Shown piece after piece: positions 19,400-63,995 of a stretch of DNA of 64,000 nucleotides (the first letter of the stretch is position 1; each line of letters starts with the position of its first letter). The notes under the pieces were generated by a model. It had not been told where the DNA came from. It made no database searches and saw only the letters and a program-made list of their open reading frames with translations. The stretch spans positions 423,956,001 to 424,020,000 of the forward strand of contig CM097883.1 in the NCBI GenBank assembly GCA_044892505.1, given 5' to 3'. A program made the position numbers and the translations under genes. This DNA is from Schmidtea nova (lineage: Eukaryota).

Positions 19400-20250
19400 A
19401 GCTCAGCCTCTTCCTCCAGATGGTTATTGTCTCAGAGTCATATTTGTCTTAGTTTGTACACTGTGTTCGTACTGTTTCGTTGCGTGATTCAGTGAGTATA
19501 GCTGGATTTTAATTTTAAAAAAAAGCAAATTTGCATCACAACTGTCTTCATCATCATCTTCATCATCATCCTCATCATCCTCATCATCATCACTATCATC
19601 CTCCCTACATGCGTAATAGTATTCATGTGCGCACCGGGGAAATCGAGCGAACGGACTCGTCGCTGTGTGTAAACGACAACATGCATCCATTTTACTACAA
19701 TGAACAGTTGTTATTTTTTGAGCTCAATAGAAATCATATGATGTTAATGAGTCTGGGTGCTAATTGAGTTTTTTTTTTATTTTTTTTCCAGTTTTTCATC
19801 AGAAATTTTCCATCTCTGCACAACGAACAATGCTGCAATGTGATTCGCAAATAGAAAATATGTTGCTCTTGTAATAAATTTTTAATCTCTACAACAACAC
19901 TTTCTACTGTTACTGTAACTACGAATTTTCGATAATAGCCAGATGGCTGCTCGCTCGATTGGAGACGAAGTACATTAAGACGGAATCCTCCTTCTCCAAT
20001 CTGTATCTGTGTGTGTCTATTGAGGCAGTTCTTTTCTGAGTGTATTTTTTCTATTGTATGCAGTGGATGCATTTTACTAAAGTATTTCAGAGGCAGAACT
20101 CCGAGATGAATGCTGTCTATTCTGAGTTGCTAGCTAATTTAGTTCTCATGAATGCTCATTAGTCGCTAATGCAATCGGAACTGTGTGGAGCAGCAATGTT
20201 GCCTCTCAATATTGTCACAGCCTCCCTTACGCTACCCCCTCTCCTACAAT
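19400..20250 (+). other. GC-enriched island with splice signals; candidate 5' exons or UTR of the NFI gene
   Basis: Donor gtgagt at 19492; branch-like gctaat, poly-T and ccag acceptor at 19790-91; ATG at 19943 (MAARSIGDE|gtacat, phase 0 compatible with 22423); (TCN)n repeat at 19545-19605. Confidence 0.3.
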
Positions 20251-20820: not shown

Positions 20821-21034
20821 TTATCTTTTTTCACCTTTGATCTTTTTTTATTATTATTATCAATAATTCTCATAATGACTATAGATCAAAATTTTTTTTT
20901 ATAAACAATAACACAATATTTCGGCACAGCCTTTATCAAGTGTGTATTTACACACTTGATAAAGGCTGTGCCGAAATATTGTGTTATTGTTTATAAAAAA
21001 AAATTTTGATCTATAGTCATTATGAGAATTATTG

Positions 21035-21121: not shown

Positions 21122-22422
21122 TTCTTAGATGTATAAATACTTTGATTGTAATATTTAAAAATAATATTAATTATATTTCTAGCTCAGGATAATATAAATT
21201 TATATCCCGCAATTAATAGATGATTTTTTGTATTTTATTTACTAATTTTCTGTGGATACTTTTTATCATACTGCATTATTTCTTTGACTTTGATCATAGG
21301 GTGCTTTTGTAATTTTAGAAGCTATCTTTGTTGTGGCTAATTTATGTATTTCTCAATATTTTATAATTTTATATAAAAGAATATTTTTTAGTCAATACAT
21401 ATTTATTCTATTTTCCAAACTTTATTTTAACTCAATTGAACATATTTTGTTACATTAATTCAGTTTAAATAAACAAAAATAGAANNNNNNNNNNNNNNNN
21501 NNNNNNNNNNNNNNNNNNNNNNNNNNNNNNNNNNNNNNNNNNNNNNNNNNNNNNNNNNNNNNNNNNNNNNNNNNNNNNNNNNNNNNNNNNNNNNNNNNNN
21601 NNNNNNNNNNNNNNNNNNNNNNNNNNNNNNNNNNNNNNNNNNNNNNNNNNNNNNNNNNNNNNNNNNNNNNNNNNNNNNNNNNNNNNNNNNNNNNNNNNNN
21701 NNNNNNNNNNNNNNNNNNNNNNNNNNNNNNNNNNNNNNNNNNNNNNNNNNNNNNNNNNNNNNNNNNNNNNNNNNNNNNNNNNNNNNNNNNNNNNNNNNNN
21801 NNNNNNNNNNNNNNNNNNNNNNNNNNNNNNNNNNNNNNNNNNNNNNNNNNNNNNNNNNNNNNNNNNNNNNNNNNNNNNNNNNNNNNNNNNNNNNNNNNNN
21901 NNNNNNNNNNNNNNNNNNNNNNNNNNNNNNNNNNNNNNNNNNNNNNNNNNNNNNNNNNNNNNNNNNNNNNNNNNNNNNNNNNNNNNNNNNNNNNNNNNNN
22001 NNNNNNNNNNNNNNNNNNNNNNNNNNNNNNNNNNNNNNNNNNNNNNNNNNNNNNNNNNNNNNNNNNNNNNNNNNNNNNNNNNNNNNNNNNNNNNNNNNNN
22101 NNNNNNNNNNNNNNNNNNNNNNNNNNNNNNNNNNNNNNNNNNNNNNNNNNGGCTGTGCCGAAATATTGTGTACTTATTTAAAGAAATTTTGGTCTTTCAT
22201 TATGGGAATTTTTGATATTAATATTATTATTAATATTANNNNNNNNNNNNNNNNNNNNNNNNNNNNNNNNNNNNNNNNNNNNNNNNNNNNNNNNNNNNNN
22301 NNNNNNNNNNNNNNNNNNNNNNNNNNNNNNNNNNNNNNNNNNNNNNNNNNNNNNNNNNNNNNNNNNNNNNNNNNNNNNNNNNNNNNNNNNNNNNCAAATT
22401 TCTTTATCTTTGCATTTTTTAG

Positions 22423-22632
22423 GAAATGTCTTGTCGAGCTGAAACTGAAATGGTGATGAATCTTTTAAAGAAATTGTATAAAGAATTGGCTTCCGATTCA
22501 ATAATTTGGTTCATAAAATGTTGGTTAAGACTTCCTGAAACTCGAGGTGAAAATTACTACAGTTGTGTCCTGAGTCGAGGTGATGCCAGAGGTCGCATGC
22601 GGCGAATTGACGGAGGAAAAGGTTCAGACAAG
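22423..22632 (+). CDS. NFI: NFI/CTF-family transcription factor, internal exon encoding the first half of the MH1-type DNA-binding domain
   Basis: Acceptor tttttag at 22421-22 and donor AAG|gtaaat at 22633; phase 0 at both ends. Encodes EMSCRAETEMVMNLLKKLYKEL...SCVLSRGDARGRMRRIDGGKGSDK. This aligns by eye to NFI RLLAKLRKDI...[24 protein letters not shown] (recalled from memory). Confidence 0.9.
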
Positions 22633-23417
22633 GTAAATTGAAATTTCTTCAACTGTTGCATGTCGTGCTATCTGTTTTTGAATTAAATTAATCAATATCA
22701 ACTTTCGATTGATTACTAATTGTAATCAAATCCCGTCTCCCGGGCTGAAAATGTGCTCATCCCTAAAAAAACCAGTTCGATAATTCGATAATTTCAATTA
22801 AATAGTATACGATGGGATTTGAGTTTGTCGAAGCAGATGTTCATTGACATTAGTATTTCAAGAAAAGCAAAATATGGTTATATTTAAACAAAATTAACTT
22901 TTTATATTCAGCTGGATGTATTTTTGATAATTTAGGTTAGTAAATTTTAAAAAAATTAAAATTAAAAATTAAAATTGATAGTTTTTCTTTTTTTCGAATT
23001 ATTTTAACAAACGTGTGCTCAATAAGGAGTTAAATGAAAAAAAAGTAATTCAAAGATTAACCCCAAGATAAATAATTAATGTCGTCTGGCAAGACCAGAA
23101 ACTACATATGAGACGAAATATAAATTGATGCTCTACTGGCATGTTTATAGCTCATATTGGGCACTCGCTCCCGATTTTGGGGTGATTGATAGGTATATTT
23201 CATCAGTACCCCACGGTTTGAAATAAAAATAAATCTGGCATGTCATTATATCACTAATTTGATTTATTCTCCATAACTCTATAATGACAATTTCACATGA
23301 TTCACAAGTAATTTGTTGATGTAATTGTTTTTAAAATTTTTATTTTTATTATTATAATTAATAATTAATTAATTATTTAATAATAGAAAAATTCCAATTA
23401 AGTAAATTCAACATAAA

Positions 23418-23455
23418 CGCGATATATATCGATTGTATAACAATCTTCTTCAGGC
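23418..23455 (-). ncRNA. Inverted copy of the same hammerhead motif
   Basis: Minus strand: tgc-CTGAAGA-a-GATTG ttata CAATC-GATA-tata-TC-gcg. Confidence 0.68.
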
Positions 23456-24531
23456 AACAATCAGGATAATCAATAATAAATAGACAATATGCAATATCTA
23501 AACAAATTAATCAATAATAATCATCCTCAGACTATATCAAAATTTAACTTTTTTAAAATCAAATTTAATTTTTTTACATAAAATTTTAAAAATTAATTAA
23601 TAAACAAACATAAAATTTATTTAAAATTCAACATACAATTAAATTTTTTTTTTTAAATGAAAATATTTACAAAAATCGAAACATTGTGAGACTGAAATAT
23701 ATAGAAAGTCGACTGACACTGGTCTGTATAATACTCCTGATAGTTTTTGTGAATTTAAATATAAGAGGAATATGGTGAGAGGATTAGTGTTTCGTGCTTG
23801 GTCATTATCTTCTACGTTTGTTAATTTAATAAAATGTATTGATGCCTTGGTTGTTACTTAAAAATGGTTGCTCTAAATCTTTTCTTGAGAAAATAACAAA
23901 AGTGATTGTGGATAAGTTAATTTTGAATTCTAATAATTTTGGTATAGGTGTGTCTGGATCTAAGGTATCTATTGATTTTGATAAAAGTACTCTTTTAATT
24001 TCGGAAAGTAAAAAAATCCATCTAATCGCACTGAGCCGAAATATGTGTTAGTATTGCCTTATCTTGAGGACTTCAGAGAATTTAAGCATAAGATTCTCAG
24101 ACCTGTTTCTCAAAAATGTCCAACGCCATTTGATTTGTGCTCTGAACTCGTGTATTAATTTTCATGTAATGAGTGTAATGCCACATTCATTGGAGAGACT
24201 GCCTGTCATCTCTGCACCCGAGTTCTTAGCATTGCTGACCAAAAGGATTGACTAATATTAGTGATCATTTTAGGGGAAATGTAGCAGTAATAATATAGGT
24301 ATCTCTGATTTTAAAATTATTTCAAAAGGTTTAAGTAATTATTGGGAGTGAGTAACTTGTGAGGCATTGTTGATTAGATATTTCAATCCAAAAATAAATG
24401 ATCAAGTTGCCCGTTCCAAGGATATTTTGAATGTGTTTAAGTAACTGGATGTTGAATGTTGCGAATTGTGTTTGTGGTATAATTATGTTTGTTTTTGCAT
24501 ATTTTCTATTTATTATTGATTGTTCTTATTG

Positions 24532-24571
24532 CCGCCTGACGAAGATTGCTATACAATCGATATATATCGCG
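24532..24571 (+). ncRNA. Type-I minimal hammerhead ribozyme motif (GAUA variant) in the PLE pLTR
   Basis: ccgc-CTGACGA-a-GATTG ctata CAATC-GATA-tata-TC-gcg: 5-bp stem II, palindromic stem III, 3-bp stem I, A14 changed to U. Confidence 0.7.
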
Positions 24572-24689
24572 TTTATGTTGAATTTACTTAGTTGGCGTTT
24601 TTATCTTATTAAATTATTGCCACGTTTTTTTAATTATATAATTAATTTTTTTTTTATTTTTTAATTATTTATTTTTTAAAATTTATTAA

Positions 24690-25470
24690 TTATCACCGTT
24701 ATCTTTTGATTTCACATTTGATCTATTTTTTTTAATTCAATTATATTAATTTTCCTAAGAGTAAATCAATTTTTTTGGTTATTACCCACATGATATTTCG
24801 GCTCAGTCTTTATCAAGGGTGTATTTCAATTGTTATACTAACTTAATCTTAAATAGTAAATTTAATCATTTATCTATTTACATCCATCCTACTTTTATCA
24901 CTTATGATCTATTAAAGTCGTCACTTTGAAAGCCCCTAATATCAAACATCTATAAACATAAATGTTTTTGTCGCTCTAAAACCAGATACTTTTGCTTTTC
25001 CAAAAATATAGAAAATAATCTAACCTGTCTATAATGTAATTCTACCTACATAGATAAATACATACAAATTTTCGCACACGATTTCATGAACACACTAAAA
25101 ATAAAACCAGCAATTAATACGAACACTGGGAGGGAGCACATAAAATGATCCACAAAAAAATCCATATACGAAATAAAAAGTCAACTTTTACAAGAAGTAT
25201 TTTAAAATTCATTACAAAGATTAGCTTTCTAAAATTCTTTTATCAAAAAACACAAACTGCCCATCAACATTCAATTCGCATAAAAAAATTATGTTTTAAG
25301 TTTAGAATTACATTTAAACGACATTAAATAAATATTTGTCCAATAAAATCATTTTGAAATATAAAATAAAATAATTAAATTTATTAATTAAGATTAGGTT
25401 AATATAACGATTGAAAAACACCCTTGATAAAGGCTGTGCCATAAAATCGTGTACATGATAAGCAAAATAA
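24690..25470. mobile_element. Diverged foldback-family copy with a ~500-bp non-palindromic interior
   Basis: Left arm ...tatttcggctcagtctttatcaagggtgtatttcaattgttatactaacttaatc is inverted against ...gattaggttaatataacgattgaaaaacacccttgataaaggctgtgcc. Confidence 0.65.
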
Positions 25471-25627
25471 TTTTATTTAGGCTTACAAAAATAATAATAA
25501 AATTATTGAATTTATTAATTAATTATTAATAATTAATTTGTAATTGAATTAATAATTATATTGGCTTTATTTAAACAAATTTGTTATATAGTAAAAAAAT
25601 ATATAATTTTTTTTCAAATCTTTAAAG

Positions 25628-25949
25628 GTCTGGAGATTAGACACAATAGTCAGCATGCTGTATCACGGAATGCCAATGTCTAGTACGGACACAAACATTA
25701 TCGTTCATACCTGTGATCAGGAGCTTTGCGTTCGACCTCAACACCTGAGATTTCGAGCGAGTGCTGTGGCTTTAGCTGTAGTATTGAAAGCTCTTCAACA
25801 AGGTGGCTATCAGTTAATTCCACCGAAAAAAGTTACCAAAGATAAAGACAATGAAAAACCAGAATCGGCCGATACTGAAAACGGACAGGAGCCAAACAGT
25901 AACAGATCCGGTTCAGCAAGTTCAGTAATAAGTGGAACACAAAATCAAG
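25628..25949 (+). CDS. NFI: NFI/CTF-family exon encoding the second half of the DNA-binding domain plus linker
   Basis: Acceptor aaag at 25626-27 (phase 0) joins ...SDK to VWRLDTIVSMLYHGMPMSSTD...TCDQELCVRPQH, matching NFI [21 protein letters not shown]...QCSNPGLCVQPHH. Donor AAG|gtatgc at 25950, phase 1. Confidence 0.92.
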
Positions 25950-26225
25950 GTATGCAGTCATTTTGTTTTTGCTTATATCTATTTAAAAATCTGTATGAAA
26001 TTGTTGAGTCTCGTTCGTGTTTCAATAGAATGATAGATTTTCATTAATTACTTTCAAATATCCATGATTTAGTGCGTTTCGTTCTCTGTAAAATCATGAA
26101 TTTCAATGAGTCTCGAATAGCATGATACAAGAAAATGTACAACTCTTCACTCATTCATTTCCTTGAATTTGTGTGTCTATTTTTAGTAAAATCGATAAAT
26201 GCATTCGATATTTAATTTTTTTAAT

Positions 26226-29179: not shown

Positions 29180-29336
29180 TTATTTTTTGAATTAAATGAT
29201 GTTGTTTGTATTAAGACGAAGTTGAAAATTCTGTTGAAATTTCTGGACCGTTCAACATAGAACAAATTCAACAGTATCTTATACGTTTGTTTTTTTAAAA
29301 TTAATAATATTTTTGATTCATCCATTTCTTTGATAG

Positions 29337-29623
29337 AAGATTTAAAACCATGTGTTCAATCACTCGAAAAGATGGTTTTGAGTGCTACAGATAGATCAAT
29401 ACTCTGTGCAAATCCTGATCTTGACAACATTAACAATATTACAGCAATATCATCAACATACGATTCACCAAGGACAATCGTAAATGACAACTCATTACAA
29501 TATAAAGCGTTCCATTTTGAAAAGTCCAACAATTCTAGACCAATGAAGCGACTAAACAACCATTTAGTTGGTGATTGTAAATCTCCGAATTCCATCAAAC
29601 GCGGTAGATTGTTGGATAGGAAG
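29337..29623 (+). CDS. NFI: Probable next NFI exon (Ser/Asn-rich linker); 3' end undetermined because it runs into masked sequence
   Basis: Acceptor tttgatag at 29335-36 is phase 1 and compatible with the previous donor (G+AA = Glu, giving QNQ-E-DLKPCVQ). The frame is open to the N-run starting at 29624. A possible donor cgcg|gtagat lies at 29604. Confidence 0.68.
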
Positions 29624-30005
29624 NNNNNNNNNNNNNNNNNNNNNNNNNNNNNNNNNNNNNNNNNNNNNNNNNNNNNNNNNNNNNNNNNNNNNNNNNNNNN
29701 NNNNNNNNNNNNNNNNNNNNNNNNNNNNNNNNNNNNNNNNNNNNNNNNNNNNNNNNNNNNNNNNNNNNNNNNNNNNNNNNNNNNNNNNNNNNNNNNNNNN
29801 NNNNNNNNNNNNNNNNNNNNNNNNNNNNNNNNNNNNNNNNNNNNNNNNNNNNNNNNNNNNNNNNNNNNNNNNNNNNNNNNNNNNNNNNNNNNNNNNNNNN
29901 NNNNNNNNNNNNNNNNNNNNNNNNNNNNNNNNNNNNAGCATTAAGTATTAAATTAATTAATAAATAAGTAACAAAATAAGCCTTTGCTGCAAAAATAATT
30001 TTATT

Positions 30006-34560: not shown

Positions 34561-36036
34561 CTTTTCCCCATCATATTTATGGAACCTCGTTGTTTCTGAA
34601 GTCCCCTGCAACGGTGAGCGTGATGCAGGTGGGGAGGCAACGGCTCTGCTTCCAACAACTATTATCTTTCTGTATTTTCACTTATGATTGTTTCTTTCTT
34701 ATTGTCATTTTTTGTTGTTGCAAAGTCTATCCAAATATTTTGGCAAAAATAAATTTTCTTTATCCAAACTAATTATTAAAGCTCAATGTTGCATAAAACA
34801 AAGCATTCCAATTATAATCTTTTGTATTTCCTTCTCAGTCGACAAAATGATAATTATTTTTAACTATTTTTATTAGACCACACTTAAAATTAAAACAAAA
34901 CTGGACGACAATTTTATTAAATTTAAAATAGTTTACAATGAAATAAAAAATAAATAAATTTAGTAAATTTGTCTTATTATTTTTTATATAACTTCAATTT
35001 AACAAATGTTAATTAGATTAAATAACTACTCAAAAATATTGTTTTTCAATGTTTTTTAGACAATAGATCAAAAAAATATTTTCCCCTCCTATTTATTATT
35101 AAATTTTAAATAAAAAAAATATTTTTGATCTAGTATCTGAAAAAACTCTAAAATATATGTTTCATAAAATAATTTCTTATTCTTTTGACAACATTTTCTC
35201 AACTCGTTCATTTCTCCTAATTTAAATTTTTAACTTTTCCGTTTTCAACTTAAAAAATCCAAGATATTCTAGAAAAATAAAATAAATACATATCACAAAT
35301 ATATTTTGCCAGAATTAAAAGTAATTGTTTTAAATTTAACTTGTAATGATCAACATTGAAAATGTTAAATTGTGCAAATTAAGGTGCCAAAATCGATAAA
35401 ACTAAAATATTTCAAAAAATTATTTTATTCCAAATTTAAAAATAAAATAAAAAGTGTTTTTGTTAATTAGAGTAAGATTTGTAAATAAATTAATTTCAAT
35501 AAACAATTGTAAACATTATTAAATCATTTATTGAACTCAATATGGATTCCAGATAACAATTAAAACAATCCATTAAAATTTTCCAAATTGGTAACATTTT
35601 ATCTCAGACAATTGTTTATTTGATTCCCATAATAATATTAAAACAAAGTTTTGTAAAGTGCTTAATTTCGAATTTAAAAGCAATTTAGACATCTAAATGG
35701 ATTTTAAGAAAAACTAATTAAAAAGTTTTTTTTTACAAAAATAATTTTGTTTTAATATATAAATTAAATTTTTTTAAATTTTATTTCTGTATTTCCATTA
35801 ACCAGAGATTTTCTTTAATTATAATTAATATTAAATTAATTTTAAAATTATTTAAATCTTCATAAAATTCAAGTAAGATGTTTTTTTGGCTTGATTGGTA
35901 ATAGATTGGAATAACATGCAATTGACAAACCTCCTAAGACAACTATTGAATGAGGTCGAGTTAGGAAACTGAAATCGTTTCTTATAATTTTAAAATAAAA
36001 AGAATTTTAATTTTAATATTACTATTAATTTTTTAG

Positions 36037-37112
36037 TCCTCCACTTCTAATGACAGACATTACTCCTGTTACTAGTGGATACTTAAAAAATGCATCAGTC
36101 CCAATTCCAACAATGAATACCAAATCGAATTCTAATAATATAAATCCACATCTAAATGGTTGCAATCTTAACGGTATTAACAGATCTGATCCCCATTCAA
36201 TAACCAATTCATTCCCAAATTTTTATCACAATCATGCGCCAAATCATAATCCTTCAAATCATCATCCCTCAATGAATTTGTGCTCCCCCAATCCCAATCC
36301 CAGGTATATGTATCAAAATCTCGGAAATCACAAATCAAATCCATTCCATCACAACCTCCATCATCCTTTTATTCCAGGAACTGGATCCCATACCTTTCCA
36401 CCTTTATTTCCATCCTCCTCCAATATTCCTGATCCTGGCAATTCAATTAAACATCATCATAGATTTTCCCCACTTTCATCTCCCCGACACGGATCAATGG
36501 ATCACTTACCCTTATCATTAACGCCAACAAAAAATAATCGCCATGGTCATAACTCCAATATAATCCATCCAGTCTCCGTGCCATACTATCCATCGTCTCA
36601 AACTCCATCGATCTTTCCATTTCGCCACAACCCATTTGAATCAATGCCTCCACTTGGTTTTTCCCGTTTTCAGTCTCCTAAGAAACCACATTTCAACAAT
36701 ATTCATCGTCCGATTCCCGAGCCAGCTACAACGTGTGCAATGCCAAAATTGGGCAATTCCAATATCCAACCGAACTTTGAAGAAGATACTCCATTGATTG
36801 ATGAAAGCTTACCAAATGAATCTTTCAGCAAAAGATCTAATGAAATAGAAAAGAATCCCTCTCCGATTGAAGAAGACAGTGTAAACGCTTCGTCATCAGT
36901 ACCTGAAAACAGCAATACTAGTACTACAACAACATCGAGAAAAAGTAACAATGTCACTCCATCACAGACCCCTAGAAAACCTGCTAAAAAACGATTAGAG
37001 GCTCGTACACCGACATTCGACAAAAATGACGAAAATCAAGGAAACTCGTCGTTGGATTTTTCAGCCTCAACTGGATCCGCATTTAGACTCGTTCACAAAA
37101 GCAAATCGATCA
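36037..37112 (+). CDS. NFI: Large low-complexity His/Pro/Asn/Ser-rich exon, probable NFI C-terminal transactivation region
   Basis: A 363-codon open frame in otherwise stop-dense DNA. Acceptor ttttttag at 36035-36 (phase 2; alternative gacag at 36055-56 is phase 1) and strong donor ATCA|gtgagt at 37113. Same strand as and downstream of the DNA-binding exons. Linkage to NFI is inferred, not shown by homology. Confidence 0.72.
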
Positions 37113-38019
37113 GTGAGTATTTAATTACTTGTTTTAATTAATGATACGATTTTGAAATGAAAAAAAAAACATTAAAAATTCATGTTTTTCATATTTAACT
37201 TTATTAGAAAACATTACCAAGTCTGTCTTTTTTTCTCTAATAAAATCAAAAACGCCTCCGGCAGTTGATGTGCTTCTAGTTCGCAATGAGAATGCAAGTT
37301 GCGATAAGAAGATATATTCGACTAATGTTATAAATTACACATTTTATTTGATTTTTTGATTTAATTTTTTTTGTAATAATTTTTTTTCTTTTTTTTAAAA
37401 TTAATACTTCTTTCTCGAATTTATTTAATAGAATTTTGTAAATTTTTCATGGAGTGTTTTTTCAGTTTCTTTAAATGTCTTACTTAATTGGAGGCTGTTT
37501 GATAAATATGCTTTGTAATTAGCTCATATGATGAGAATAGTATTTTGAGGCATTTATTATTACACGATGTATATAATATACACTGACTGTATATGAAAAA
37601 GTAATAATTGTTTATATCTTATCACTACAGCATCACAGAAAAAAAATCCCTTCTCCTGAGGATTGTAACCAAGGATTAGAAAAGGATGATTAAAACTTAG
37701 AATTTTCATTTTCAGAACTATCTTTAATAGTCATGATTTACCATATTTTATTATCTTTAAATGAAGATTCTTCTTATCAAATAGAGTTGCGAGGTTTCCT
37801 TGACAAGTTTCTTATAAAATTCATCGTCAAGGTAGCAAACGTACGACATTATACTCTGGTTATAAGGTAAAGTGGATCCATCTAGTTGAAGAGATATTAT
37901 AATAATATTATAACTTCAATGATCTTTTGGCTTATATTTCAAAAATTTGATAAATTTTTAAAAGATGAAAGTATTACTAAATTTTTTAGCTAAGTTTTTA
38001 CAATATTCCATTATAATAA

Positions 38020-63887: not shown

Positions 63888-63995
63888 AAGCTTTGTGATA
63901 CCCAGTGCAAAACGCCAATAGCAAACTAGTTTCGAGCTTTTGGTCCTCATCAGTGCTATTCAGGAGACACTATTGCACTTGGTATCACAAAGCTT
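63888..63995 (-). ncRNA. Type-I hammerhead ribozyme closing a long hairpin (retrozyme/pLTR-like)
   Basis: aatagca-CTGATGA-ggac caaaa gctc-GAAA-CTAG-TT-tgctatt has a perfect 7-bp stem I. It is enclosed by a 23-bp inverted repeat (63888-63910 / 63973-63995, 1 mismatch). Confidence 0.78.

What the first reader, a model, noticed from the sequence alone, without database searches (positions are those of the whole stretch)
22560..25745. Divergent NFI whose DNA-recognition segment is rewritten but whose Zn ligands are kept
Seen: the spliced peptide reads SCVLSRGDARGRMRRID-GGKGS-DKVWRLD...TCDQELCVRPQH. Established: the NFI segment [16 protein letters not shown] is near-invariant from nematodes to vertebrates. 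Its Cys (the third conserved Cys) is dispensable for DNA binding but confers oxidation sensitivity, while the other conserved Cys residues and the CxxPxH His form an MH1-like Zn site. Here CLRQA becomes GGKGS, C-x5-C shortens to C-x4-C, and C, C, C and H are all retained. Inference: a folded, possibly redox-insensitive NFI paralogue that may bind a motif other than TTGGC(N5)GCCAA, or has lost sequence-specific binding.
Basis: partly seen in the sequence, partly recalled or inferred. Interest (0 to 1): 0.75.

Follow-up and report, generated by a model that had tools for sequence, protein, structure and literature searches.

The report
Ordinary flatworm NFI gene, divergent hairpin

Summary
Exon A (22423-22632) and exon B (25628-25949), joined across a GT/AG intron, read ...SCVLSRGDARGRMRRIDGGKGSDK|VWRLD...TCDQELCVRPQH. 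Both pieces hit only solved NFI chains, and the two matches abut.

- GGKGS and C-x4-C are not peculiar to this gene. Every parasitic flatworm sampled has the same hairpin, except Cichlidogyrus (CGKGS). Macrostomum has an intermediate, GLRGS.
- Several of these proteins are already named "CTF/NF-I domain-containing protein" or "nuclear factor 1 A-type".
- C-x4-C also occurs in C. briggsae NFI-1 and two other invertebrate NFIs.
- Only the hairpin tip has changed. The two residues that read bases in human NFI (Arg116, Lys125) are kept. So are most backbone contacts (Lys78, Lys81, Arg115, Arg121 as Lys, Thr145), the Asp124 lock and the four Zn ligands.
- Exon B is under strong purifying selection (dN 0.02, synonymous sites near saturation).
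- An AlphaFold model of the S. mansoni orthologue matches NFI-DNA crystal structures (TM 0.78-0.86).

Most likely this is the species' functional NFI orthologue, reading a TGGC-type half-site. Loss of Cys-3 and a rebuilt dimerisation helix leave redox control and half-site spacing open. No RNA data exist for this genome. The N-terminal exon is not visible in the readable window.

The parts
22423..22632 (+). Exon A of the NFI gene. It encodes helix alpha3 (LLKKLYKEL, with Lys78 and Lys81 equivalents), Zn ligand Cys (22564-22566) and the first strand and tip of the DNA-reading beta-hairpin, RMRRIDGGKGSDK (22594-22632; GGKGS = 22612-22626).
   Evidence: Translation. phmmer to NFI chains. 65-68% identity to flatworm NFI proteins by tblastn. 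HMM hit at 115 bits.
22633..25627 (+). Intron of 2,995 nt with GT...AG ends. It carries a ~1.2-kb insert bounded by perfect 41-bp terminal inverted repeats (23399-23439 / 24550-24590) and pieces of palindromic MITE-like elements.
   Evidence: Splice signals and inverted repeats. The same intron position occurs in the cestode locus L001, where the intron is 5,714 nt.
25628..25949 (+). Exon B. It encodes the second hairpin strand VWRLD, the MH1-like core, Zn ligands Cys (25712-25714), Cys (25727-25729) and His (25742-25744), and a C-terminal hydrophobic helix (SAVALAVVLKAL) in place of NFI helix alpha5. The donor g|GTATGC is at 25950.
   Evidence: Translation. phmmer to NFI chains at E = 1.5e-4. 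81-92% identity to flatworm homologues. dN 0.02 against pS 0.71 versus L002.
29216..29284 (+). Exon C (boundaries inferred). It encodes D-EVENSVEISGPFNIEQIQQY.., the conserved post-DBD motif of flatworm NFI.
   Evidence: tblastn and HMM matches to flatworm NFI proteins. Splice sites were read.
29337..29623 (+). Exon D (start inferred). It encodes DLKPCVQSLEKMVLSATDRS... and runs into a masked N stretch at 29624.
   Evidence: tblastn to Trichobilharzia P0013. HMM hit. Sequence.
36029..37138 (+). Long open frame holding a downstream exon of the same gene. The conserved block TPRKPAKKRLEARTPT lies at about 36968-37021.
   Evidence: tblastn to five flatworm NFI proteins. HMM hit at iE = 1.3e-8 over 36857-37078. 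No Pfam family.

Best explanation
The finding is two coding exons of this flatworm's Nuclear Factor I (NFI/CTF) gene. It is the orthologue of S. mansoni Smp_152430 and of the Clonorchis and Paragonimus proteins already named 'nuclear factor 1 A-type' or 'CTF/NF-I domain-containing protein'. The window comes from an AT-rich parasitic flatworm (Neodermata).

Shown:
- The exons encode the core of an NFI DNA-binding domain under strong purifying selection.
- The CCCH Zn site is intact.
- The Gly-rich hairpin tip (IDGGKGSDK instead of IDCLRQADK) is shared by every parasitic flatworm sampled except Cichlidogyrus (CGKGS). Macrostomum has GLRGS. It is an old lineage feature, not a feature of this locus.

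Inferred:
- The protein folds like human NFI: an MH1-like core with a Zn site, a beta-hairpin, and the N-terminal antenna domain that is visible only in orthologues.
- It inserts the hairpin into the major groove. Both base-reading residues (Arg116, Lys125) and most phosphate contacts (Lys78, Lys81, Arg115, Lys for Arg121, Thr145) are kept, so it most likely still reads a TGGC(A)-type half-site.
- It has lost the hairpin anchor Cys-3, so it probably lacks that particular redox switch.
- The helix that swaps between subunits in the human dimer has a different sequence, so dimer geometry and half-site spacing are the most plausible place for a functional difference.
For: Identity as NFI:
- Only NFI chains are hit in the PDB, and the hits to the two exons abut.
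- The S. mansoni orthologue's DBD matches human NFI-C residues 8-168 at E = 8e-17.
- An AF2 model of that orthologue (pLDDT 81.9) has NFI DBD structures as its top 20 Foldseek hits (TM by target 0.78-0.86, E = 1e-11 to 3e-9). SMAD MH1 follows only at E ~1e-2. In the ESM Atlas the best cluster is arthropod 'Nuclear factor 1' at TM 0.78.

Lineage-wide conservation:
- The cestode genomic locus L001 reads CCVLSRPDAKGRMRRIDGGKGSDK and TCSQELCVRPQH, with the intron in the same place.
- Seven trematodes, two monogeneans and Macrostomum are covered.
- All 10 flatworm rows form one group at 100/100 in the tree, and the window falls inside the Neodermata group at 96/97.

Selection: for the exon B core against L002, dN = 0.02 and pS = 0.71, giving omega about 0.01. 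Only the exon aligns at DNA level.

Residue roles:
- PMC12630593: Arg116 and Lys125 are the only base readers; Cys119 anchors the hairpin; Zn is held by Cys103, Cys156, Cys162 and His167; helix alpha5 swaps in the dimer.
- PMC12830966: R116A or K125A abolishes binding; A123 contacts DNA through its main chain; R38, K78, K81, Q110 and R121 contact the backbone.
- These were mapped onto the window in the alignment.

Precedent: C. elegans NFI-1 differs at 60 of 151 vertebrate-invariant DBD residues yet binds the same site (PMC1277823).
Against: - There is no RNA evidence from this genome.
- The exon for the N-terminal helix and antenna domain (with the Arg38 equivalent) was not found in the readable part of the window. 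It may lie in masked N stretches or upstream of the window, so an intact full DBD is not shown for this locus itself.
- All three Pfam NFI models (MH1, pre-N, CTF_NFI) fail their cut-offs on flatworm proteins. The branch to other NFIs is very long, so functional change is possible.
- Three glycines in a five-residue tip, loss of the Cys-3 anchor, Gln110 to Ala and a replaced alpha5 helix could alter affinity, specificity or dimerisation.
- In the model the hairpin block has the lowest pLDDT of the core (68).
- I could not test whether flatworms also carry a second, canonical NFI.
- The structure model is of the S. mansoni orthologue (75% identical over exons A and B), not of the window protein.
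Confidence: 0.8

Rival explanations
1. One reading: a neofunctionalised NFI whose rebuilt hairpin gives a different DNA motif, or no sequence-specific binding, and makes it redox-insensitive.
For: The tip positions 119, 120 and 122 are all Gly, and the Cys-3 anchor described in PMC12630593 is lost. Ala123, which lies near the TT methyl groups, is Ser. Gln110 is Ala. The alpha5 helix and its pocket residues differ. The branch is very long. Pfam models fail. Hairpin pLDDT is low.
Against: Arg116 and Lys125, the only base-reading side chains, whose single mutation abolishes binding, are invariant in all flatworm sequences. Ala123 contacts DNA through its main chain, and Ser occurs there in nematode NFI-1, whose C. 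elegans orthologue binds the canonical site. Arg121Pro in human NFI-X still binds DNA like wild type, so this part of the tip tolerates change. Conservation of the exact hairpin across all the parasitic flatworm lineages sampled argues for a constrained DNA-contacting function, not loss of function.
Confidence: 0.15
2. An ancient flatworm-specific paralogue that coexists with an unsampled canonical NFI elsewhere in flatworm genomes.
For: The flatworm group is separated from all other NFIs by a very long branch with no intermediate outside Platyhelminthes. My searches could not list flatworm hits among about 2,600 canonical NFIs, because only the best 120 are shown and all of these are chordates or nematodes.
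Against: Macrostomum shows an intermediate hairpin (GLRGS) and a CVLTVPDGKGKM segment like nematode NFI, as expected for gradual divergence of a single orthologue. The architecture is collinear beyond the DBD (SGPF..QQY block right after the DBD, basic PAKKR block). NFI is single-copy in C. elegans and Drosophila (PMC13637464). No other NFI was noted in this genome by the scan (weak evidence).
Confidence: 0.1
3. A decaying pseudogene or chance open frames.
For: No RNA evidence for this genome. The upstream exon is not visible. A transposon-like insert sits in the intron.
Against: dN 0.02 against near-saturated synonymous change. 75% protein identity to trematode orthologues over 136 residues without frameshift or stop. 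Splice sites are intact. Downstream exons are conserved.
Confidence: 0.02

Closest known systems
Flatworm NFI proteins already in databases: S. mansoni Smp_152430 (XP_018646284.1), Clonorchis sinensis 'nuclear factor 1 A-type' (GAA52456.1, KAG5455061.1), and Paragonimus, Opisthorchis, Trichobilharzia, Echinostoma and Cichlidogyrus 'CTF/NF-I domain-containing protein'
   Same: 74-76% identity over exons A and B to the trematode proteins with a complete DBD; less to Cichlidogyrus (62.5%) and to the faulty Echinostoma model (60%). The hairpin RMRRIDGGKGSDKVWRLD is identical. The same C-x4-C...H Zn motif, the same post-DBD SGPF..QQY and PAKKRLEARTP blocks, and the same intron position as in the cestode locus.
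   Different: Species-level differences only, such as RLPETRGENYY before the first Zn Cys. Cichlidogyrus keeps Cys at the Cys-3 position (CGKGS).
Vertebrate NFI-A/B/C/X DNA-binding domain (PDB 7QQD, 9QKY, 9JH2, 9XVD, 9W7S)
   Same: The same fold in the orthologue model (TM 0.78-0.86). The CCCH Zn ligands, base-reading Arg116 and Lys125, the backbone contacts Lys78, Lys81, Arg115 and Thr145, the Asp124 lock residue, and Arg128/Asp130.
   Different: The hairpin tip is GGKGS instead of CLRQA, so there is no Cys-3 anchor and no such redox site. Gln110 is Ala. Spacing is C-x4-C rather than C-x5-C. The alpha5 dimerisation helix sequence is replaced. Flatworm proteins have a long N-terminal extension and a total length of 650-1,480 residues. 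All three Pfam NFI models fall below threshold.
Nematode NFI-1 (C. briggsae CBR-NFI-1; C. elegans NFI-1)
   Same: A single-copy invertebrate NFI with many substitutions at vertebrate-invariant positions. It has C-x4-C and Ser at position 123. C. briggsae has Ile at the Cys-3 position. C. elegans NFI-1 still binds the canonical site (PMC1277823).
   Different: It keeps L-R-Q in the tip and is recognised by the Pfam MH1 and pre-N models.
SMAD MH1 domain
   Same: The same basic Zn-stabilised fold with a DNA-reading beta-hairpin. Arg and Lys sit at equivalent base-reading positions (PMC12630593).
   Different: Only a weak structural match (E ~1e-2, TM 0.44-0.6). There is no MH2 domain, and the NFI-specific antenna domain is present in the orthologues.

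Membership tests
NFI/CTF DNA-binding domain | Significant sequence similarity to NFI DBDs, collinear across the domain | tested here: met
   The window exons hit only NFI chains, and the two matches abut. The joined peptide gives E = 6e-21 to C. briggsae NFI-1. The orthologue P0012 matches human NFI-C residues 8-168 at E = 8e-17.
NFI/CTF DNA-binding domain | CCCH Zn site (Cys103, Cys156, Cys162, His167 of NFI-X) | tested here: met
   All four align to Cys, Cys, Cys and His in the window peptide. The ligands are defined in PMC12630593.
NFI/CTF DNA-binding domain | Base-reading Arg116 and Lys125 in the beta-hairpin | tested here: met
   In RMRRID....DKVW both residues are present and invariant in all flatworm rows.
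NFI/CTF DNA-binding domain | N-terminal helix and antenna domain (pre-N region, Arg38) | tested here: inconclusive
   Not found in the readable window. N stretches lie directly upstream of exon A. It is present in orthologues as SEALFVRALIGRCKRIAPLWFRGVSSMRERNR, aligned to [27 protein letters not shown].
NFI/CTF DNA-binding domain | Pfam models PF03165 (MH1), PF10524 (pre-N) and PF00859 (CTF_NFI) above gathering score | tested here: not met
   There was no hit, or only sub-threshold MH1 hits (14.9-20 bits against a cut-off of 25), on window pieces and flatworm proteins. Canonical NFIs in the same runs pass. This reflects divergence beyond the models' reach. UniProt still names these proteins CTF/NF-I domain-containing.
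NFI/CTF DNA-binding domain | NFI fold (MH1-like core plus antenna) | tested here: met
   Tested on the S. mansoni orthologue, not on the window protein. The AF2 model has pLDDT 81.9. The top 20 PDB matches are all NFI DBDs. The ESM Atlas NFI clusters match at TM 0.71-0.78.
NFI/CTF DNA-binding domain | Cys-3 (Cys119), the redox-sensitive hairpin anchor | tested here: not met
   It is Gly in the window and in most flatworms. It is not strictly defining: the literature reports it as dispensable for DNA binding, and C. briggsae NFI-1 has Ile there.
NFI/CTF DNA-binding domain | Helix alpha5 that mediates the dimer swap (Leu175, Tyr178, Leu179) | tested here: inconclusive
   The sequence is not conserved (SAVALAVVLKAL). 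A helix is predicted at the equivalent place, residues 176-188 of the model. Dimerisation itself was not tested.
NFI/CTF DNA-binding domain | Binding to TTGGC(N5)GCCAA or TGGCA half-sites | not testable with these tools
   This needs EMSA, PBM or SELEX.
SMAD | MH1 domain followed by an MH2 domain | tested here: not met
   No MH2 hit was found in full-length flatworm proteins. The structural match to SMAD MH1 is far weaker than to NFI.

The most novel reading that the evidence does not exclude
Flatworm NFIs keep the two base-reading residues, but they have a Gly-rich, unanchored hairpin tip without Cys-3 and a replaced alpha5 dimer-swap helix. They might therefore form a functionally distinct NFI class. 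Binding would be insensitive to the Cys-3 redox switch, and the half-site spacing or oligomeric state would differ from TTGGC(N5)GCCAA, for example monomeric half-site binding. The whole class is invisible to Pfam's NFI models.
Probability: 0.25. Interest if true: 0.45.

Novelty: new member of a known kind. Interest (0 to 1): 0.25.

Why it matters
As it stands, this is a routine annotation result: the window holds the NFI gene of a parasitic flatworm.

Three points are of modest use.
- Flatworm NFIs escape all three Pfam NFI models, so domain-based transcription-factor catalogues of schistosomes, flukes and tapeworms may miss them.
- Several public gene models for this locus are faulty. The Hydatigera gene is split into separate proteins, and the Echinostoma model lacks the hairpin.
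- The new NFI-DNA structures allow a residue-level prediction for the lineage: the half-site reading is retained, the Cys-3 redox anchor is lost, and the dimer helix has changed. A simple binding assay on the S. mansoni protein would test this.

Tried and rejected
- Pfam scans of the exon pieces and of flatworm orthologues gave no NFI family above cut-off. There were only weak MH1 and zf-His_Me_endon hits; the latter fit the structural matches to His-Me/HNH endonuclease clusters.
- RNA support: the look-up of sequencing runs listed four runs from one study, none on record as RNA.
They were masked in the local repeat script. The local six-frame HMM scan of the window had them only as part of the target.
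- The upstream exon was sought by tblastn with five full-length flatworm proteins and by a --max HMM scan of all six frames. It was not found. I did not try to fill the N stretches.
- Whether flatworms also have a canonical NFI could not be settled. A word search with a canonical DBD returned 2,622 hits, of which only the best 120 (chordates and nematodes) are listed.
- ESM Atlas search by features gave no usable hit.
- Literature on flatworm NFI: 'Smp_152430' gave no paper. The broader searches returned false leads such as NFIL3.
- The earlier-findings index held nothing on NFI in this genome.
- I did not type the spliced peptide into the remote tools. The joined sequence was used only in local scripts, so the structure model is of the S. 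mansoni orthologue.
Full report
**1. What is in the sequence**

The window is very AT-rich (25% G+C once N stretches are left out) and has many masked N runs.

On the + strand, 22423-22632 is an open frame preceded by tttttag| and followed by |GTAAAT. It reads EMSCRAETEM...SCVLSRGDARGRMRRIDGGKGSDK.

After 2,995 nt, the acceptor TTTAAAG| ends at 25627. The frame then continues VWRLDTIVSMLYHGMPMSSTDTNIIVHTCDQELCVRPQHLRFRASAVALAVVLKAL..., up to a donor g|GTATGC at 25950.

phmmer against every PDB chain finds only human NFI-A/B/C/X DNA-binding domains for both pieces. Exon A ends at NFI residue ~115-118 (..ADK), and exon B begins with the next residue. Two independent pieces hitting the same family, with matches that abut, is far more than chance. 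Joined locally, the 136 residues give E = 6e-21 to C. briggsae NFI-1.

**2. What organism, and what relatives**

A word search with exon B found only flatworm sequences:
- Protopolystoma (a monogenean);
- Hydatigera (a cestode);
- two unnamed contigs.

A profile search of 1.84 billion representatives found 18 strong relatives. Where named, they are all Platyhelminthes:
- Paragonimus (three species), Clonorchis and Opisthorchis;
- Schistosoma mansoni (Smp_152430), Trichobilharzia and Echinostoma;
- Cichlidogyrus, Mesocestoides and Macrostomum.

UniProt calls them 'CTF/NF-I domain-containing protein'. NCBI calls two of them 'nuclear factor 1 A-type'.

The window peptide is 74-76% identical to the trematode proteins with a complete DBD. 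In a maximum-likelihood tree it sits inside the Neodermata group (96/97). All ten flatworm rows form one group (100/100), separated from other NFIs by a very long branch.

The window therefore comes from a parasitic flatworm whose species I could not name.

**3. The 'rewritten' features are lineage-wide**

The cestode genomic locus L001 reads ...CCVLSRPDAKGRMRRIDGGKGSDK|GT... and, 5.7 kb on...AG|VWRLD...TCSQELCVRPQH. It has the same hairpin, the same C-x4-C and the same intron position.

The hairpin tips across the sampled sequences are:

| Sequence | Hairpin tip |
|---|---|
| All trematodes with an intact model | RMRRIDGGKGSDKVWRLD |
| Cichlidogyrus | CGKGS |
| Macrostomum | GLRGS |
| An unidentified transcript-like contig (L004) | GGKGS |

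Outside flatworms the segment is not invariant either:
- C. briggsae NFI-1 reads IDILRQSDK.
- Two other invertebrate NFIs read IDCFRQSNK.

The Cys-Cys spacing also varies. It is x4 in C. briggsae and in those two invertebrate NFIs, x5 in vertebrates and x6 in a tunicate-like NFI.

The C-x4-C point is therefore ordinary. GGKGS is an old flatworm character, not a property of this locus.

**4. Is it a live gene?**

The closest relative is the metagenome contig L002. Against it, the 66-codon core of exon B has dN = 0.02 with 71% of synonymous sites changed (omega about 0.01). Over all 107 codons dN is 0.054, with synonymous sites saturated. Only the exon aligns at DNA level.

Splice sites are canonical.

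Further conserved exons of the same gene lie downstream:
- 29216-29284;
- 29337 into the N run at 29624;
- the PAKKRLEARTP block in the open frame 36029-37138.

A pseudogene is excluded for the visible part.

The junction therefore rests on two things. One is the conserved intron position. The other is two intron-free contigs from public runs, L003 (a 332-codon frame filling a 1,104-nt contig) and L004. Both read GGKGSDKVWR(L/I)D continuously.

**5. What the substitutions mean, given the NFI-DNA structures**

In NFI-X numbering the hairpin is K113-M-R115-R116-I-D118-C119-L-R121-Q-A123-D124-K125-V-W-R128-L-D130.

From PMC12630593:
- Bases are read only by Arg116 and Lys125.
- Lys113, Arg115 and Arg121 touch phosphates.
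- Ala123 faces the TT methyl groups.
- Asp124 is locked to Arg38 until DNA binds.
- Cys119 (Cys-3) anchors the hairpin in a hydrophobic pocket, and its oxidation inactivates the protein.
- Zn is held by Cys103, Cys156, Cys162 and His167.
- Helix alpha5 (residues 174-180) swaps in the dimer.
- Arg121Pro still binds DNA like wild type.

From PMC12830966:
- R116A or K125A abolishes binding.
- Ala123 contacts DNA through its main-chain oxygen.
- R38, K78, K81, Q110, R121 and T145 contact the backbone.

Mapped through the alignment, the window protein compares as follows.

| Kept | Changed |
|---|---|
| Arg115, Arg116, Asp118, Asp124, Lys125, Arg128, Asp130 | Lys113 to Arg and Arg121 to Lys (both conservative) |
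| Lys78, Lys81, Thr145 | Ala123 to Ser (as in nematode NFI-1) |
| All four Zn ligands | Gln110 to Ala |
| | Cys119, Leu120 and Gln122 to Gly |

The recognition residues are thus intact. What is lost is the tip's side chains and its anchor.

After the Zn site, the alpha5 sequence (VKELDLYLAYF) is replaced by RASAVALAVVLKAL. Its partner pocket also changes from I-P-L-E to M-P-M-S.

**6. Fold**

The S. mansoni orthologue (residues 150-352) matches human NFI-C residues 8-168 at E = 8e-17, N-terminal helix and antenna region included.

Its AlphaFold model (26-row alignment, pLDDT 81.9, pTM 0.77) has a helix at the alpha5 position. Its lowest core confidence is at the hairpin.

The top 20 Foldseek hits are all NFI DBD structures (TM by target 0.78-0.86). 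SMAD MH1 domains follow at E ~1e-2. ESM Atlas NFI clusters match at TM 0.71-0.78.

This was tested on the orthologue, not on the window protein, because a spliced peptide has no reference.

**7. What is not shown**

The exon for the N-terminal helix and antenna domain (SEALFV..PLWFRG..RERNR in relatives) was not found in the readable window. Masked stretches begin 28 nt upstream of exon A, and I did not try to fill them.

All three Pfam NFI models fail on flatworm proteins while passing on canonical NFIs in the same runs. The family assignment therefore rests on direct sequence and structure comparison and on the source names.

I could not establish whether flatworms also have a canonical NFI. 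NFI is single-copy in C. elegans and Drosophila (PMC13637464), and Macrostomum is intermediate. I therefore favour simple orthology.

**8. Verdict**

This is the species' NFI orthologue, a new member of a known and already annotated flatworm group. It most likely still reads a TGGC-type half-site through Arg116 and Lys125.

Loss of the Cys-3 redox switch is a reasonable inference. A change in dimer geometry or spacing is possible but untested.

C. elegans NFI-1 differs at 60 of 151 vertebrate-invariant residues and still binds the same site (PMC1277823). That precedent warns against reading altered specificity from divergence alone.

Interest is low to modest.

Noticed in passing
window 23399-24590: Inside the NFI intron there is a ~1.2-kb insert bounded by perfect 41-bp terminal inverted repeats (23399-23439 and 24550-24590). 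It holds two short open frames (23839-24051, 24064-24255) of unknown affinity and looks like a small DNA transposon.
   Followed up: partly
window 20915-20990; pieces at 22151-22175, 24795-24830, 25420-25450: A palindromic MITE-like element (..ttcggcacagcctttatcaag..cttgataaaggctgtgccgaaatattgtg..) recurs around and inside the gene, flanked by (ATT)n microsatellites. It may belong with the rod-like hairpin or hammerhead element that another first-stage note reports at 63888-63995.
   Followed up: no
L001 (Hydatigera taeniaeformis UYWX01020454.1) 112-10255; proteins P0009, P0005, P0007: Public gene models of this locus are faulty. In Hydatigera the NFI gene is split into three separate predicted proteins (269, 135 and 84 aa). 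The Echinostoma model P0009 skips 22 residues, including the whole hairpin. P0005 and P0007 read through intron sequence between RRID and VWRLD.
   Followed up: partly
proteins P0011, P0012, P0015, P0039 (flatworm NFIs): Pfam MH1, NfI_DNAbd_pre-N and CTF_NFI all miss flatworm NFIs at their gathering scores, so Pfam-based transcription-factor inventories of flatworms probably lack this family. The recurring weak zf-His_Me_endon hit fits the structural matches to His-Me/HNH endonuclease clusters.
   Followed up: partly
protein P0033 (C. briggsae CBR-NFI-1): It has Ile at the Cys-3 position (RRIDILRQSDK). The C. elegans paper (PMC1277823) states that all four conserved cysteines are kept in CeNFI, so Cys-3 is not invariant even within Caenorhabditis.
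   Followed up: no
window 19424-19770: There is a His-rich (+ strand) and Asp/Glu-rich (- strand) trinucleotide-repeat open frame about 3 kb upstream of exon A. It was not matched to any flatworm NFI protein, and its meaning is unknown.
   Followed up: no
The tool says this filter also trips by chance. Nothing was laid, so there is no read-level evidence for this locus.
   Followed up: no
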